Below are positions 3,015 through 44,469 of a stretch of DNA of 64,000 nt, piece by piece; position 1 is the first letter of the stretch; each line of letters starts with the position of its first letter. A program made the translations under genes and the position numbers. This DNA comes from Macrostomum hystrix (Eukaryota; Animalia; Platyhelminthes): positions 3,224,001 to 3,288,000 of the forward strand of contig CATNEN010000001.1 in NCBI GenBank assembly GCA_950097015.1, written 5' to 3'. The notes beneath the pieces are model-generated. The model was not told the origin of the DNA. It did no database searches and saw only the letters and a list, made by a program, of their open reading frames with translations.

Positions 3015-4592
3015 ATGCAAGACCAAGGCGAGAAGGACAGAGAGAAAGAGGTAAGCATTAGTTCTGTATTCATTAAATGGGGCATTTTAGGTTAAATAGT
3101 ACTACAGGCTCATTAGTTTTTATTGAATTACATTTTTGACAAATCTACACAGTTTTAGCTTCACAAAAAAGTAAATTTTATCATCCATTCTGAGCAGAAC
3201 CTCCGTACTAATAGTCCGGCTCTGCAGCAGAGGAAATCAAACTTGCTTGTTGCTAGTGGATTGCGCCTACCCTCATTGGCGTCTTCGATAGCTGCCTCGC
3301 CTCAGCAGCAGGAGCAGCAGTCAGGTACTAGCTCCGCGTCAGCTGCAGGATTGAATAAGCATAGTGCCGTCTATAAGACAGGTGAAAAAAAAATGTCATT
3401 TGCTTTTAATTAAGCAGTTTTTTATTTGTCTTTTTAAAGCGTCGCTAGCCTATTAATTGGAGCAATTGTCGGACTAACGACTTCAAGGTCGGGGGTTCGA
3501 TTCCCAATTTTCATTTGCTAAAGGTTATCAAGCTGGTTAAATGGGTAGAAGATTTCAAATTTAGCAATAAACAAAACATTTGATAATTCCTAATCAGGTA
3601 CCATTGGGGGTCCGTTTACATCTCGCACCGAGGTCCCTAAGCTCGATTCCGCGGCGAGGCCACATTCATTTGGGGCGCAGCCGCGGAGAGAAGGCTTTGC
3701 GGGCTTGTCGCGCAGTTAACGCCCTTGTGGGCCAACCTCCAAGGCACAGTGAGAGTGTACACTGACGATGAGAAAGTCAGGGCAGATGTACACACCTGTG
3801 TGAGCGTGTGCCTGCGTACAGTATCTGTGTGCGTGTGTGCTCAGGAGTCAGCGAAATGAGCAGAATTGCCTCCTCGCTGGCTGCGTGCCTAGATAGAGTC
3901 TTCTAATGATGTGCCATTGCCCGCAGCCCTGTTGCAAATTACTATTATTATTATTATTATTATTATTATTATCCCCATTCCAAATAATCCTTATTCATAA
4001 ACTTCCAGTCGATCGCTCTGTTCAGCAGTCGCCGCTGTTGCAGCTGCCCCTGCCTCCGCAGTGCTCAACAGGCTTAGCGTCGATTGCTCAGCCTCGCAAA
4101 TCAATCGGCATGCCAACCTATTCCTCGCCTGTCGGAGTTCGAGACGGTCGACGCCCGGCCTTCGCCGCCTCAGCCGCCCAGCCAAGCAGTCCGCCGCCGT
4201 TGCCGCCGAAGCGACTCTGTCAGTCTTTGTCTCTGCACGCCGAACTGCTCAGGCCTGTCCCACTGCGGCCTGGAGCACTGGCTGGGGATCTAGAATCATT
4301 GCTGTGTCTGGGTCAGCGTCCGCCGCCGCCCGCACCGCCGCAATCTTTGAAGTCGTCTAGAAAGCGAAGGGTGCTTTTAACCAGCCGATCGAGAAGTTTT
4401 CTAGTCGGCTTGCCCGACGTGGCTTCGTCCGATTCCATTGTCGGCAATCAAAATTTGTCCGAGGGCAGTTTTGATCAGGAGCGGAAGTATGATAGCGTCG
4501 ACTATGACGACTGCGCGGCTAATTCAGATAGCGACTCAATTGCCGAGGCATCCGAATTTCTAGATTTAGAGCTTATAGAACGAGATCTGTGA
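3015..4592 (+). CDS. FAM53-like (simplet family) low-complexity protein, 3 exons, 267 aa
   Basis: Exons 3015-3050, 3198-3381, 4009-4592 have GT-AG boundaries and consistent phases (0,1), 804 nt in total. The motif PPPLPPKRLCQSLS..L.P..RP, an SRSRS segment and C-terminal LDLELIERDL resemble FAM53 (PPKRHCRSLS...; LD(I/L)xxIExN). Family call is from remembered motifs only. Confidence 0.55.
3438..3508 (+). other. Degenerate tRNA-like fragment (Pol III B-box), probable SINE relic or pseudo-tRNA
   Basis: GGTCGGGGGTTCGATTCCC resembles a T-arm/B-box. The A-box region is poor and no complete cloverleaf can be built. Confidence 0.3.
3606..3972 (+). mobile_element. tRNA-derived SINE, copy A (in FAM53-like intron 2; 5' head partly deleted)
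   Basis: Homologous to 22580-22877 (-) and 40373-40727 (+): AGGTCCCTAAGCTCGATTCC, CTCAGGAGTCAGCGAAATG, GCCTCCTCGCTGGCTGCG...CCCGCAGCC and a (TTA)n tail. Confidence 0.85.
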
Positions 4593-17307: not shown

Positions 17308-38955
<21,648 letters not shown>

Positions 38956-39816
38956 TTTTAATATAATAAACTAATTAGATGGCTATTGGTATGCATCGAT
39001 ATAGTTACTCCCGCCGTTTACCTAGTACCAGTTTTTCTCCTGTGATGATGCAATAGCTTTTCGTTTCGCTTAAGTGTAATTTTATCGATTTTTTAATCTC
39101 TTAAATCATTTAAAAATCGTTGATAAATCGCTTATCCAATTTTTGTTTTAAACATATAAACCGTTAATTTTGAGTCTCTCTTATAGATACAGTAGTTGGA
39201 AAAGTGGATTACACTTTATAAATCAGAATTATCCCTTAATCTTCAATGTGATATCCTATTCGTATACACTAATCTGTGTTGTCCACTAATTTGCTTATGT
39301 ATATTTTTTGTATTTTTCTTAGCATTGTTTTCCGATGTAATTTACTATATATTTGTGCACTGATCATTTTAAACAGATTAAGTTATAAACGTGTTTTGAT
39401 GTTTTTAAACAGACTTTTTTTAATGTTTTAGTTAGTTTGTTGTTACACAATAAGCTATCTGTTACTAATACGTAAATTTAGTTCTAAAATCATTAGTCTT
39501 TTGTGTTTACATTATATTCTCCAGCAAAGAACCTGTCTAGCAAAAGCTACTTGCAGTAGTTTGCACCAAAGCTTATGCAATTTATTTGCTATTTACTTAA
39601 AGTCAATAAAATACAATCCGCGTTTGTCATTAATGAAAGTAGTATATTTTGTGTTTTTTATTTTCATTTAGTTCTTTAGATTAAGGTCAATTAACAGTAA
39701 CTACTACCTTAACAATAGTTTATTTATTACACTAAAGTTAATCTAAAATTAACTTTATCTTGACTTCATTTATGGTTTTTTCCAACTTGGTTTGCAGAAT
39801 AAGCAAGTAATCAATT

Positions 39817-42800
39817 ATGGCATCTGCGGATCTGCCAATCAATATCGAGCCGACCGAGGAGTCTAAATTATCGGACGACAAGACCGAAAAAGCGTCAACC
39901 ACTTCGTCATCTTCGGCGTTGACTTTGGGCACTGCTGCCACAGCCAACTCCGCCGATTGGGAGCTGGTCGAACCGCCGGCAGTGCCCAGTCTACTGTCTG
40001 CTGAATGTCTGGCGCCTTCTGCCAGCAGTAGCAGCTCCGTTGAGGTTTTGCTAGCCTCTGAAACAGAGGACGCCCTTGAAGATGCCGATAGCCTAGCTAA
40101 TAATGTGGACGAAATTGGCGTTGAACTGCTGGAAGATAATGAGCAGCAAATGATGCCAAGCTCCATGCAAGCTTCTGGTTCTACAGTGGCGACAACTACG
40201 GAGACCACCGCTGTTCAGCAGGCTGCTGGACGACAAGATGACACGACGACGGATTCAGTTCAGCAGCAGCAGCAGCAGCCACTAATTTCAGGACCATCCG
40301 AACAACGGATTATTCAAGCGATTCGTCTATTACAAAACACTTTGCCAGCATCGTCCGAGCAGCCGGCGCCTCAGGGGGTGAGTGGTAGAGCGGTCTAACG
40401 CGATTGCCTCTTGCGCCAAGGTCCCTGAGCTCGATTGCGCGGCGAGGCCACATTTATTTGGGGCGCAGCCGCGTAGAAAATGCTTGGGTACTTTTCGTGC
40501 AATTTAGGGCACTTCAAGGCACTATTTGTTAAGGTCCTGGCGATGAGAAAGTCAAGGCAGATGTACATTATACCTGTGTGAGCATGAGCCTGCAGGACGG
40601 TATCTGGATGCGTGTGTGCTCAGGAGTCAGCGAAATGGGGCAGAACTGCCTCCTCGCTGGCTGCGGGTCTAGTGTCACCAAATGATGCGCCATTGCCCGC
40701 AGCCCTCCTGCAATTATTATTATTATTAGGCGGCGCCTCCGTCTCCTCCGTCGACGCCGACGCCTCCGCCGGAACCGGAGCCCGCTCGACTTCGCATTAT
40801 TCGTCGCTGGCTAGCCTACGACGAAGAGGACATCAACGAAGCCGAACGAGAGTCGCCTCCCGAGAGCGACATCGGACTGGCCGATCCGCCGCCGCCCGCA
40901 GCTGGCAACGAGGATCAGGACAATAACGCCGACTATGGCCACGTGCTGCCCGCGATGCTGGCTACAGCAGCCCGTCAGCGTCAGCGTCAGTATTGTCATC
41001 GGCCGAATGACCCGGTGAATTGCCGGCTGACTGTTCTGTGCCTGCTGGCTTTGGCGTTCGCCACCGGTCTCGGCCTCGGACATTTTTTTGGCTGCTCCGG
41101 TTCTGGGCGAGACGGCCGGCTGCTGATTGGTTGCCGGGCCTGGAGGGCCGATCAGGTATTCCATTTGTATTTCTCGTTTTGTTTAATGATTCAGGTTTTG
41201 AGGTTGTGACCCTTTTCCCCAAATTATCTTCTCTTTCTTCCCCAATCTTCTCCCCTTTCTTTCCCCGAATTTCCCCTTTCTTTCCCCCAATCTTCTCCCC
41301 TTTCTTTTCCCCAATCTTCTCCCCTTTCTTCCCCCCAATCTTCTCCCCTTTCTTCCCCCCAATCTTCTCCCCTTTCTCCCCCCCCAATCTTCTCCCCTTT
41401 CTTTCCCCCAATCTTCTCCCCCTTTTTCACCGCAATCTTCTCCCCTTTCTTCCCCCCAATCTTCTCCCCTTTCTTGCCCCCAATCTTCTCCCCTTTCTCC
41501 CCCCCCAATCTTCTCCCCTTTCTCCCCCCCAATCTTCTCCCCTTTCTTTCCCCCAATCTTCTCCCCCTTTTTCACCGCAATCTTCTCCCCTTTCTTCCCC
41601 ACAATCATTTCCCCTGTTCGTCTGTTCCAACCCCGATGTTCTTATTTTTGTTCCTATTATATTCTCCTCTTTCTTCCCTCAATCTCCCCTCCTTCCCTGC
41701 TTAAGTCCTATTGAATTTCTCTAATTGATACTCATCTCGTCTCCTCCCTGCAACCCCAAGGCTTCTCGTTCGCGCGCCCTTCGTCGCGATCTAGCCGCTT
41801 GCACTCGTCGCTACGACGATCTGGAGCTAACTATCAGCGAACTGAAGACTACCCTAGTGCAGAAGGAGTACGTCGACAAATGGGAGAGCTTATACGCCGA
41901 ATCCGAAGAGGAGAAGGACGCCCTGCGCGTTGCTATGGAGCTCTACAAGACTCGATATAATCGGGAGAAGGCTAAGAATGAAGAGCTGGGGGAGCGCTTG
42001 GCGGAAGCTGAGAGAGTCTGCAACGCAACCCAGTCTAATGTACAGGTGATTAACGGGAAATCGCTGGTCTTTAGCCTTTTTAGTTGCTAGGGTACTAAAC
42101 TATGCAGTCGTTTTTTGATTCGTATCTTTCGCTTATTTGTATATAATAGTTGGTTGCCATGCTAGCTTTCTGGCAAATGATGGTTGTTGCTATGCGAGCT
42201 TTCTGGCAAATGATAGTTGGTTGCTATGCTAGCTTTCTGGTGAATAATGGTTGGTTGCTATGCTAGCTTTCTGGTGAATAATGGTTGGTTGCTATGCTAG
42301 CTTTCTGGAAAATGATGGTTGGTTGCTATGCTAGCTTTCTGGTGAATAATGGTTTGTTGCTATGCTAGCTTTCTGGATAATGATGGTTGGTTGCTATGCT
42401 TGCTTTCTGGTTAATGATAATTAGTTGCTATGCTAGCTTTCTGGTGAATAATAGTTGGTTGCTATGCTAGCTTTCTGGTGAATGATAGTTGGTTGCTATG
42501 CTAAGTTTTAGTAAATGATAATTGGTTGCTATGCTAGTGTTTTGGTAAATGATGGTTGGTTGCTATGCTATCCGGTTAGTTAGTGATATTTTGTCGTTAT
42601 TTTACGATAGTTGCCATGGTAACTCTTTATTAAGACGTCAACAACGATCATAGGTTTTTGCTTTACACAGGTTCTACTGATGAGTTTAGTCGTATTGCTG
42701 TTTTTTCAAATAATTTTTTTATTATTTTAGATCGAACAGTTGAAATCTGCCAATGCCAAGCTTCTCACTGAGGCAGCTGAGCTTCGTTCTAAAATTGATT

Positions 42801-44469
42801 CTAACAAGCTCGCTAACCAATGCCATCGCGACTGGCTATTCGGCGTCCTTAGCAACGGCACTGCAGCCGCCGCTAAAGTTGGCTGCGGCCTGTTTAATCG
42901 GGTTAACAATGCTTCGGATCGGTTGCTAAGGAAGCTTAGCAACAGTTCCAGCGGAGTTATGATGAAAAAGTTCACTAACGCCACTGTGGCCCTATTTAGA
43001 AAGCATCTAGGCGACGTCACTAATCGGTTGCTAGGCAACCTAGACAAAGCTTCCGGCGGCTATTTGGCCAATTTGCCAAAGCGCTATTTCAATTTCTCCA
43101 TGATTGAAGTCGCAACCGTAACGACTGAGGATAAAACTAAAGAGACTGAACCCCCAGGTCCGGCTCCACCTTCAATTATTGTTGCTAAGGACGCTCAGTG
43201 CGTCATTAGCAACGCCAAGAACAGAGAAGATTTAGCCAGCAAGGCCAGCACCGCCCTTCGCTGGAGTCTGGATGGTCGCGCCGAGGTGCGCGCGAAGGAG
43301 AGAAAAATTGGGGCCAAAGAGATTCAACGTCTGGGGAAGCTGAATCGCAGGAAGGGAACGCGACACGACTGGTACGCGCGAAGGCTGCAGGTGCGTCGCT
43401 GAATAAAACTATTTGATTGACAAGTTCTACTTTTAGATTTGGAGGATCGACCCTATCCGCCATTTTCCCCCTGAATTAATCCATATCGCTGTTTTTAATA
43501 GACTGACCCCTAACAGTTTCCAATAGATTGACCCCTAACAGTTTCCAATAGATTGACCCCTAACAGTTTCCAATAGATTGACCCCTCACAGTTTCCAATA
43601 GATTGACCCCCTCCCAGTTGCCAATAGACTGACCCCTAACAGTTTCCAATAGATTGACCCCCTCCCAGTTGCCAATAGATTGACCCCCTCCCAGTTTCCA
43701 ATAGATCGACCCCCTCCCAGTTGCCAATAGATTGACCCCTCGCAGTTTTCAATAGATTGACCCCCTCCCACAGTTTCCAGTAAATTGACCCCCTCCCAGT
43801 TTCTAAAAGATTAACCCCTTCCCAGTTTCCGATATTAGATTGAACCCCTCCCAGTTTCCAGTAGATTGACCCCCTCCCAGTTTTCAATAGATTGACCCCC
43901 TCCCACAGTTTCCGATAGATTGACCCCCTCCCAGTTTCCGATAGATTGACCCCCTCCCAGTGTCCAGTAGATTGACCCCCTCCCAGTTTTTAACAGATTG
44001 ACCCCCTTACCAGTTTCCGATAGATTGACCCTCTCCCAGTTTCAATATTAGATTGACCCCTTGCCAGTTTCCAATATTAGATTGACCCCTTGCCAGTTTC
44101 CAATATTTGACTGACCCCCTCCCAGTTTCTAATAGATTGACCCCTCCCAGTGTCTTCTAGTGAAACTGACGGAGTTTTCTATATCCCTAGAAACAGCACT
44201 AAGTTAATGTCTCAAATAAAATTTCTTAGACTCGACAGAAGCTGCGAGGTCACTATGAGGCGTCAAAGTCGAAGCCATACTACGACAATAAGCATTTTCC
44301 AGAGGAGGTCTTTGACGATGCCGACAGTCGGCTAAATATGAACGAGCGTAGCGAGGATGTCGAATGGGGCGTCGGGCAGCTGAAGGCCGCAGTTGACAAA
44401 GTCACTACTAGGCTAGCTCGGATTAAAGAAAAATTTCTCGCCGCAAAGCAGAGAAGATGGTCGGCTTAA
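39817..44469 (+). CDS. CCPG1/PBXIP1-like single-pass membrane protein (candidate ER-phagy receptor), 5 exons, ~723 aa
   Basis: Exons 39817-40377, 40730-41155, 41761-42045, 42731-43390, 44230-44469, all phase 0 GT-AG (2172 nt). The acidic disordered N-terminus has a LIR-like DWELV and FIR-like SVEVL/GVELL. The TM segment TVLCLLALAFATGLGLGHFFG resembles CCPG1 (CVILALVIAISMGFGHFYG) and is followed by a coiled coil. The gene model is more secure than the family name. Confidence 0.65.
40373..40727 (+). mobile_element. tRNA-derived SINE, copy C, forming intron 1 (40378-40729) of the CCPG1-like gene
   Basis: Head AGGGGGTGAGTGGTAGAGCGGTCTAACGCG (A-box), GGTCCCTGAGCTCGATT (B-box-like), 3' stem GGCTGCGGG/CCCGCAGCC and a (TTA)n tail. 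TSD AGCCGGCGCCTC (40361-40372)/AGGCGGCGCCTC (40728-40739). Confidence 0.9.
41237..41605. repeat. Pyrimidine-rich ~24-bp repeat in CCPG1-like intron 2 (CCCCAATCTTCTCCCCTTTCTT)
   Basis: About 15 copies. Confidence 0.9.
42147..42572. repeat. 34-bp repeat in CCPG1-like intron 3 (CTTTCTGGTGAATAATGGTTGGTTGCTATGCTAG)
   Basis: About 12 copies. Confidence 0.9.
43495..44150. repeat. 25-28-bp repeat in CCPG1-like intron 4 (CAGTTTCCAATAGATTGACCCC...)
   Basis: About 24 copies. Confidence 0.9.

What the first reader, a model, noticed from the sequence alone, without database searches (positions are those of the whole stretch)
40361..40739. A SINE that is itself an intron: candidate SINE 'introner' in a coding exon
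Seen: intron 1 of the CCPG1-like gene (40378-40729) consists of a full-length tRNA-headed SINE plus the first 2 nt of its downstream TSD. The SINE starts AGGGG|GTGAGT, a consensus 5' splice site; its 5' end is fixed independently by the TSD of copy B at 22877. The (TTA)n tail runs into the 12-bp TSD (AGCCGGCGCCTC 40361-40372 vs AGGCGGCGCCTC 40728-40739, 11/12 identical), whose first two bases give ...TTATT-AG| as the acceptor. Splicing leaves 5 nt of SINE plus 10 nt of TSD, 15 nt in frame, so the inferred ancestral EQPAPPSPP becomes EQPAPQGAAPPSPP and the frame stays open into the TM domain. Unspliced RNA stops at 40396-40398. Established: most described introners are DNA transposons that carry one splice site and co-opt the other from the TSD. 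Inference: this Pol III retroposon family uses the same logic and could create introns genome-wide whenever its TSD begins with AG and the length keeps frame.
Basis: partly seen in the sequence, partly recalled or inferred. Interest (0 to 1): 0.9.

Follow-up and report, generated by a model that had tools for sequence, protein, structure and literature searches.

The report
SINE insertion spliced as coding intron
In the flatworm Macrostomum hystrix a short jumping-DNA element (a SINE) landed inside a protein-coding exon and is now cut out of the RNA as an intron, using a splice donor in the element's own head; this way of gaining an intron is known but seldom documented in animals, and it has happened more than once in this genome.

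Summary
A full-length, about 355-nt SINE (40373-40727) lies between an 11/12 target-site duplication inside an open reading frame. The family has at least 2,700 first-look candidates in this genome.

Transcript contigs from three runs of one study each join 40377 to 40730, removing 352 nt with GT..AG ends and no mismatches. They keep the 5' duplicate, AGGGG of the SINE and 10 nt of the 3' duplicate. So the RNA comes from the SINE-bearing allele, and the target was continuous exon.

The donor GTGAGT is part of the SINE head: 350 exact genomic copies carry it, against 794 with GTCGGT. The acceptor AG sits where the (TTA)n tail meets the duplication.

This copy is old, 84% identical to the family consensus against 93% on average. 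The genome is the Macrostomum hystrix assembly.

My own screen of 51 full-length copies found a second case, in the single-copy AP-3 delta gene. There the duplication supplies both splice sites. That case has no RNA check.

This scan has noted a dozen or so similar cases elsewhere in this genome.

Verdict: a real new member of a known kind, TE- or SINE-made introns. Interest is moderate.

The parts
39798..40377 (+). Exon 1 of the host gene: a short 5' UTR, then the CDS from the ATG at 39817. It ends ...EQPAPQG.
   Evidence: The ORF is. Transcript contigs lie on 39797-40376/7 with 0 mismatches. An AG acceptor sits at 39796-39797, and the contigs carry 23 further 5' letters. A trans-spliced leader is inferred from this, not shown.
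40361..40372 (+). 5' copy of the target-site duplication (AGCCGGCGCCTC). It lies wholly within exon 1.
   Evidence: Read directly. It is kept in the mRNA contigs.
40373..40727 (+). Full-length SINE in sense orientation, with a head carrying A- and B-box-like motifs, a core and a (TTA)n tail. It is 84.3% identical to the family consensus.
   Evidence: Genome search, alignment of 31 copies, consensus comparison.
40378..40729 (+). The spliced intron, 352 nt and phase 0. It consists of SINE bases 6 to the end plus the first 2 nt of the 3' duplication.
   Evidence: The joint in runs X2, X3 and X4 skips 352 nt with GT..AG ends (cut +1). There is one contig per run, 255 letters on the shorter side of the joint (the tool's 'side').
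40378..40383 (+). 5' splice site GTGAGT, supplied by the SINE head.
   Evidence: The same hexamer is found in a subfamily of copies, with 350 exact 20-mer heads in the genome.
40396..40398 (+). In-frame TAA that would end the protein if the SINE were retained.
   Evidence: ORF 39817..40398.
40714..40729 (+). (TTA)n tail running into the acceptor AG (40728-40729): a U/A-rich tract plus the 3' splice site.
40728..40739 (+). 3' copy of the target-site duplication (AGGCGGCGCCTC). The first 2 nt are the acceptor AG and the other 10 nt open exon 2.
40730..41157 (+). Exon 2 (AAPPSPPSTP...TM segment...CRAWRADQ). Its donor GT is at 41158.
   Evidence: The contigs lie on 40729/30-41156 and then leave the genome, although the stretch laid ran on to 41205. 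It is 75% identical to the M. lignano ortholog P0001.

Best explanation
An old, full-length copy of an abundant Macrostomum hystrix SINE retroposed, in sense orientation, into a continuous coding exon. The host gene encodes a single-pass membrane, coiled-coil protein. The insertion duplicated about 12 nt of exon.

The element brought a consensus 5' splice site (GTGAGT, bases 6-11 of its head) and a U/A-rich (TTA)n tail. The first AG after the tail lies at the tail/duplication boundary and serves as the 3' splice site. The spliceosome therefore removes 352 nt (40378-40729) as an ordinary GT-AG, phase-0 intron.

The mRNA keeps AGGGG of the SINE plus 10 nt of the second duplicate. This is 15 nt, so five residues are added (inferred EQPAPPSPP becomes EQPAPQGAAPPSPP) in a poorly conserved, proline-rich linker, and the frame is preserved.

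Shown: the element, its duplication, the junction in RNA and the retained scar. Inferred: that the five-residue insertion is tolerated because the linker is unconstrained, that splicing is efficient, and the date of the insertion.
For: Sequence and frame.

Family membership, element ends and duplications of other copies.

RNA: runs X2, X3 and X4 each have one contig of about 2.5 kb on 39797-40376 and 40729-41156 with 0 mismatches. The joint skips 352 nt with GT..AG ends, and the contig leaves the genome at the next donor. There is almost no depth over the intergenic 38943-39734, so these runs behave as RNA.

Contigs covering 40412, 40437 and 40646 carry other copies' letters (all covering depth at 40412 in X1 and X2; a little depth with this locus's letter elsewhere) (table 3).

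The gene is single-copy and has an ortholog in M. lignano.

The head donor is a subfamily trait: 350 exact GTGAGT heads against 794 GTCGGT heads.

An AG lies within -2..+5 of the start of the 3' duplicate in 13 of 21 copies, against 35% of random 7-mers.
Against: All the RNA evidence comes from assembled contigs of one study whose library type is not on record. Contigs cannot give splicing efficiency, and they drop rare isoforms.

The intronless ancestral state was not seen directly. The M. lignano protein reads LPTSAEQQQQQQPLQSSPPTPPPEPEP at this place, which is too diverged to align residue by residue.

The duplication is 11/12 rather than perfect, and the A of the AG could belong to the tail rather than to the target.
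Confidence: 0.9

Rival explanations
1. The SINE landed in, or at the edge of, a small intron that already existed, so no intron was gained. The scan judged this to be the case at another locus, s1-843772.
For: SINE copies do sit 50-70 nt inside ordinary small introns elsewhere (L055 and L039). No DNA from an outgroup was available.
Against: The intron holds nothing except SINE bases plus 2 nt of the duplication. The whole 5' duplicate and 10 of 12 nt of the 3' duplicate are present in the mRNA and read in frame. No non-SINE intron sequence is left over.
Confidence: 0.03
2. This is a one-off accident. The family has no special tendency to make introns, and this copy survived only because it happened to offer GT...AG in frame within a tolerant linker.
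For: In my sample only 1 other copy of about 50 full-length ones splits an exon, and it probably uses a different donor. Both cases are old (84% and 89% identity to consensus). No young copy in the sample lies in a coding exon.
Against: The GTGAGT head is carried by hundreds of copies. The tail plus an AG-rich start of the duplication gives a ready acceptor in 13 of 21 copies. I found a second exon-splitting copy by chance in only 240 kb of sampled DNA. The scan holds a dozen or so unchecked notes of further cases in this genome.
Confidence: 0.3
3. The insertion is a partly disabling, possibly polymorphic allele. Much of the pre-mRNA keeps the SINE, meets the TAA at 40396 and is degraded, so the spliced form is only leakage.
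For: Contigs cannot measure retention. The assembly comes from one inbred line (PMC10468722).
Against: The copy is old (84% to consensus), yet both flanking frames stay open for 187 and 143 codons. The donor is a consensus GTGAGT.
Confidence: 0.07

Closest known systems
[quoted passage not shown] 2007, PMC2394776)
   Same: A SINE inserted into coding sequence is removed as a spliceosomal intron.
   Different: That case is in a plant and is a single event. Here the host is an animal (a flatworm), the junction is seen in RNA contigs, the donor is a family-wide motif of the SINE head, and at least one more case exists in the same genome.
Alu 'intronization' in human 3' UTRs (Sela et al. 2007, PMC2394776)
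   Same: A SINE insertion into an exon creates new splice sites and hence an intron.
   Different: The Alu cases lie in 3' UTRs, are alternatively spliced and needed activating mutations. Here the intron lies in the coding sequence, keeps the frame and uses an unmodified consensus donor from the element.
Introners: intron-generating transposons of Micromonas, Aureococcus, fungi, dinoflagellates and others (Gozashti et al. 2022 PMC9860276 and 2025 PMC12130899; review PMC11282704)
   Same: The element carries one splice site (5' GT) and takes the 3' AG from the target-site duplication. Non-LTR retrotransposon-derived families make up about 5% of the classified introner families.
   Different: Most introners are DNA transposons, mostly in protists and fungi, with hundreds to thousands of recent, near-identical introns. 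Here the element is a SINE-like retroposon in a flatworm, only two cases were tested by me, and both are old. 'SINE', 'flatworm' and 'Macrostomum' do not occur in the main text of either survey.
Intron gain by duplication of an AGGT proto-splice site (cited in PMC2394776)
   Same: The second case, AP-3 delta at L049, duplicates TCAG|GTGAAGCT, so the two copies can supply the donor and the acceptor and restore the original mRNA.
   Different: The window's own intron does not work this way. Its donor comes from the SINE, and a 15-nt scar remains.

Membership tests
SINE (short non-autonomous retroposon) | Short, non-coding, high copy number | tested here: met
   About 365 nt. At least 2,701 first-look candidates. 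350 + 794 exact 20-nt heads.
SINE (short non-autonomous retroposon) | Simple-repeat 3' tail and variable target-site duplications flanking full-length copies | tested here: met
   (TTA)n tails, and exact duplications of 12-18 nt in 21 copies.
SINE (short non-autonomous retroposon) | Head derived from a tRNA (or 5S/7SL) with an internal Pol III promoter | tested here: inconclusive
   Motifs resembling box A (TGGCAGAGCGG) and box B (GTTCGATTCC) are visible. ARAGORN and Rfam call no tRNA in old or young copies.
SINE (short non-autonomous retroposon) | Partner LINE sharing the 3' end | not tested
   No search was made.
U2-type GT-AG spliceosomal intron | Removed from mature RNA at GT..AG | tested here: met
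   The joint 40377/40730 is present in contigs of three runs.
U2-type GT-AG spliceosomal intron | Branch point and efficient constitutive splicing | not testable with these tools
Introner (intron-generating TE family) | The element itself constitutes the intron, with one splice site carried by it and the other co-opted from the duplication | tested here: met
Introner (intron-generating TE family) | Many similar introns in unrelated genes | tested here: inconclusive
   Two cases rest on my own tests: this gene and AP-3 delta. The scan's notes list a dozen or so more, unchecked by me.
Introner (intron-generating TE family) | Recent or ongoing intron gain, seen as near-identical copies | tested here: not met
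   The two intron copies are 84.3% and 88.6% identical to the consensus, against a mean of 93.4%.

The most novel reading that the evidence does not exclude
This SINE family is a true retroposon 'introner' of an animal. Its GTGAGT head, its U/A-rich (TTA)n tail and a target preference that puts AG (often AG|G or AG|GT) at the start of the duplication make a sizeable share of sense insertions into exons spliceable. As a result it has seeded tens of coding introns in Macrostomum by two routes: head donor plus tail/duplication acceptor (leaving a scar), or both sites from a duplicated proto-splice site (scarless).
Probability: 0.45. Interest if true: 0.7.

Novelty: new member of a known kind. Interest (0 to 1): 0.55.

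Why it matters
How new spliceosomal introns arise is an old open question. Well-documented gains in animals whose source can be identified are few. Here the source element, the duplicated target, both splice sites and the spliced RNA can all be read off one locus. The same SINE family splits at least one other, highly conserved gene.

If a genome-wide count confirms many such introns, Macrostomum would give a tractable animal model for studying intron birth by a retroposon. It is culturable, and its relative M. lignano is an established laboratory model. The study could cover which insertions are rescued by splicing and what scars they leave in proteins.

Tried and rejected
So the M. lignano genes P0001 and P0002 could not be inspected for an empty site.

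Protein searches returned only M. lignano relatives, and no other Macrostomum species. The junction region is too low in complexity to align residue by residue.

No paralog exists in the genome that could preserve an intronless state.

tRNA ancestry of the head was not confirmed.

L055 and L039 looked like further exon-splitting copies in the ORF screen. On reading them, they are SINEs lying 50-70 nt inside ordinary small introns. L005 is a low-complexity artefact.

Run X1 (another organism label) holds only a 256-nt contig that ends at 40360. It says nothing about the junction.

I redid it by computing the consensus inside the script.

Full report
**What is in the sequence**

AGCCGGCGCCTC (40361-40372) and AGGCGGCGCCTC (40728-40739) flank a 355-nt element. 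The element begins A-GGGGGTGAGTGG at 40373 and ends in a TTA run at 40714-40727.

The frame that starts at the ATG at 39817 is open to 40377. It is open again from 40730 to a donor at 41157/41158. Read straight through, it stops at TAA 40396-40398.

**The element is a real, abundant retroposon**

A search of the window's own genome gave at least 2,701 first-look candidates and 40 scored full-length matches. An alignment of 31 copies with their flanks shows three shared features. There is a common 5' end, (A/G)GGGGGT. There are motifs resembling Pol III A and B boxes. There is a (TTA)n tail followed by a repeat of the 5' flank.

Exact duplications of 12-18 nt were found in 21 copies.

There are two head types. 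GGGGTGAGTGGCAGAGCGGT has 350 exact genomic matches. GGGGTCGGTGGCAGAGCGGT has 794. The GTGAGT donor is therefore a subfamily trait, not a mutation private to this copy.

ARAGORN and Rfam do not recognise a tRNA in this copy or in young copies. 'tRNA-headed' therefore remains a motif-level statement.

The window's copy is 84.3% identical to the family consensus, against a mean of 93.4% for 50 full-length copies. It is an old insertion.

**The organism**

G000 has 220,453,370 bases in 42 contigs. These are exactly the figures published for the Macrostomum hystrix assembly (PMC10468722).

The best protein relatives of exon 2 are from M. lignano (P0001, UniRef A0A1I8JJI5). Exon 2 is 75% identical to P0001 and exon 1 is 43% identical.

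**RNA evidence**

The one sequencing-run search found four runs of one study holding 73-75% of the sampled words. That is about the exonic share of the stretch, 989 of 1,341 nt.

I laid three of them, plus one run from another organism label, on 38250-41205. In each of X2, X3 and X4, one contig of 2,474-2,514 nt lies on 39797-40376 and 40729-41156 with no mismatches. The reported joint skips 352 nt with ends GT..AG (cut +1, that is 40378-40729).

The same contigs stop matching at 41156, which is the donor of the next intron, although the stretch laid continued to 41205. Depth over the intergenic 38943-39734 is almost nil. The runs therefore behave as RNA, although their library type is not on record.

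The contigs begin at 39797, just after an AG, with 23 further letters at the 5' end. Trans-splicing of a leader is the likely reason. The published genome paper reports 20% of genes as SL trans-spliced. I did not see those 23 letters.

The mRNA contains the full 5' duplicate, AGGGG of the SINE and 10 nt of the 3' duplicate. It was therefore transcribed from the SINE-bearing allele, and the target was continuous exon. This excludes both an empty-site allele and a pre-existing intron.

At three places where this copy differs from the family (40412, 40437, 40646), nearly all covering contigs carry the family letter; at 40412 in X1 and X2, all of them do (table 3). Contigs drop rare forms, so this is weak evidence for efficient splicing.

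**How it works**

The SINE supplies the donor GGG|GTGAGT and a U/A-rich tail. The first AG after the tail is the acceptor.

Fifteen nucleotides stay in the mRNA, so five residues are added in a proline-rich linker that differs strongly between M. hystrix and M. lignano.

In the sample of copies, an AG lies within -2..+5 of the start of the 3' duplicate in 13 of 21 cases, against 35% of random 7-mers. Duplications often begin TTAAGG, TAAGG, TTAGC, AGGG or TCAGG. This suggests a target preference that tends to place an acceptor right after the tail. That step is inferred.

**Is it unique?**

I then screened all 96 SINE hits in hand for open frames on both sides.

With at least 100 open codons on both sides there were three hits in sense orientation: the window, L049 and L005. 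L005 is a low-complexity artefact. There were none in antisense orientation.

L049 (G000:C1:13547517-13550917) is the AP-3 delta adaptin gene. A full-length sense SINE (L049:2315-2676, 88.6% to consensus, GTCGGT head) sits between ...VQAVFVHNQ and VKLYASLLL....

Human AP3D1 (9c5c_D) aligns residues 377-508 to the upstream piece and 510-568 to the downstream piece. The SINE therefore splits a conserved, colinear coding region.

The duplication there is TCAGGTGAAGCT(G). Its 5' copy offers CAG|GTGAAG and its 3' copy offers TCAG|. Splicing between them would restore the pre-insertion mRNA exactly. Use of the head GT would add 12 nt in frame.

The gene is single-copy, so it must be spliced to function. 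I could not test this with RNA.

L055 and L039, flagged at lower thresholds, are SINEs inside ordinary small introns.

**Earlier notes of this scan**

Look-ups returned a dozen or so notes of SINE-made introns in other parts of this genome. One (s1-337250) has a head donor but no RNA. One (s1-843772) was judged to be an insertion into an existing intron. These are unchecked leads. They agree with my own second case that the event is not unique, and I tested the pre-existing-intron rival on my own locus.

**Comparison with what is known**

A SINE-made coding intron is on record for rice catalase A, and Alu-made introns are on record for human 3' UTRs (PMC2394776).

Introners usually carry one splice site and take the other from the duplication (PMC11282704). 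About 5% of the classified introner families derive from non-LTR retrotransposons (PMC12130899).

Neither survey mentions SINEs, flatworms or Macrostomum in its main text. A search for Macrostomum with SINE and intron found no dedicated paper.

The finding is therefore a new, well-documented member of a known kind. The family-level reading remains open.

**Limits**

- The RNA evidence is contigs from one study.
- No genome-wide count was made.

Noticed in passing
L049:2307-2686 (G000:C1:13549823-13550202): A second SINE splits a coding exon, in the single-copy AP-3 delta adaptin gene. The 12-13-nt duplication TCAGGTGAAGCT(G) can supply both splice sites and restore HNQ|VKLYAS. Human AP3D1 is colinear across the site.
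   Followed up: partly
L049:1700-1796: A 5' fragment of the same SINE family (GTGAGT head, sense) lies inside the preceding intron of the AP-3 delta gene, which is about 650 nt long.
   Followed up: no
L055:1700-1976 and L039:1701-1956: Internally deleted SINE copies sit 50-70 nt downstream of ordinary donors in small introns and make up most of the intron length. These are intron growth by SINE insertion, not intron birth.
   Followed up: partly
21 SINE copies in L002-L064 and the window: Target-site duplications often begin TTAAGG, TAAGG, TTAGC, AGGG or TCAGG. This hints at a target preference resembling TTA|AG that places an acceptor-like AG just after the (TTA)n tail.
   Followed up: partly
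window 39796-39798: Transcript contigs start just after an AG that follows a pyrimidine-rich run, and they carry 23 unaligned 5' letters. This probably marks spliced-leader trans-splicing of the gene.
   Followed up: no
window 31200-35600: A long tandem array of a 36-nt unit (the repeat finder reports 123 in-register placements of a 300-nt reference, so this is not a copy count). The listed placements (31200-32600) are about 95% alike in the array's interior.
   Followed up: no
window 37505-38164, 41214-41615, 42149-42570, 43497-44151: Four successive introns or spacers around the gene each hold a different minisatellite, with periods of 21, 24, 34 and 26 nt and 12-32 copies.
   Followed up: no
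window 40260: A contig from run X1, which has a different organism label, carries one extra CAG in the glutamine run of exon 1. This is a length polymorphism or a difference between strains or species.
   Followed up: no
L008:2283-2396 (-): An Rfam K_chan_RES match (potassium-channel RNA editing signal, 53.6 bits against a gathering score of 51) lies next to a SINE copy. It is presumably an exon of a Shaker-type channel gene.
   Followed up: no
window 3613-3955 (+) and 22583-22877 (-): Two more copies of the same SINE family lie in the window. One is 5'-truncated and one is internally deleted. Neither is flanked by open frames on both sides.
   Followed up: partly
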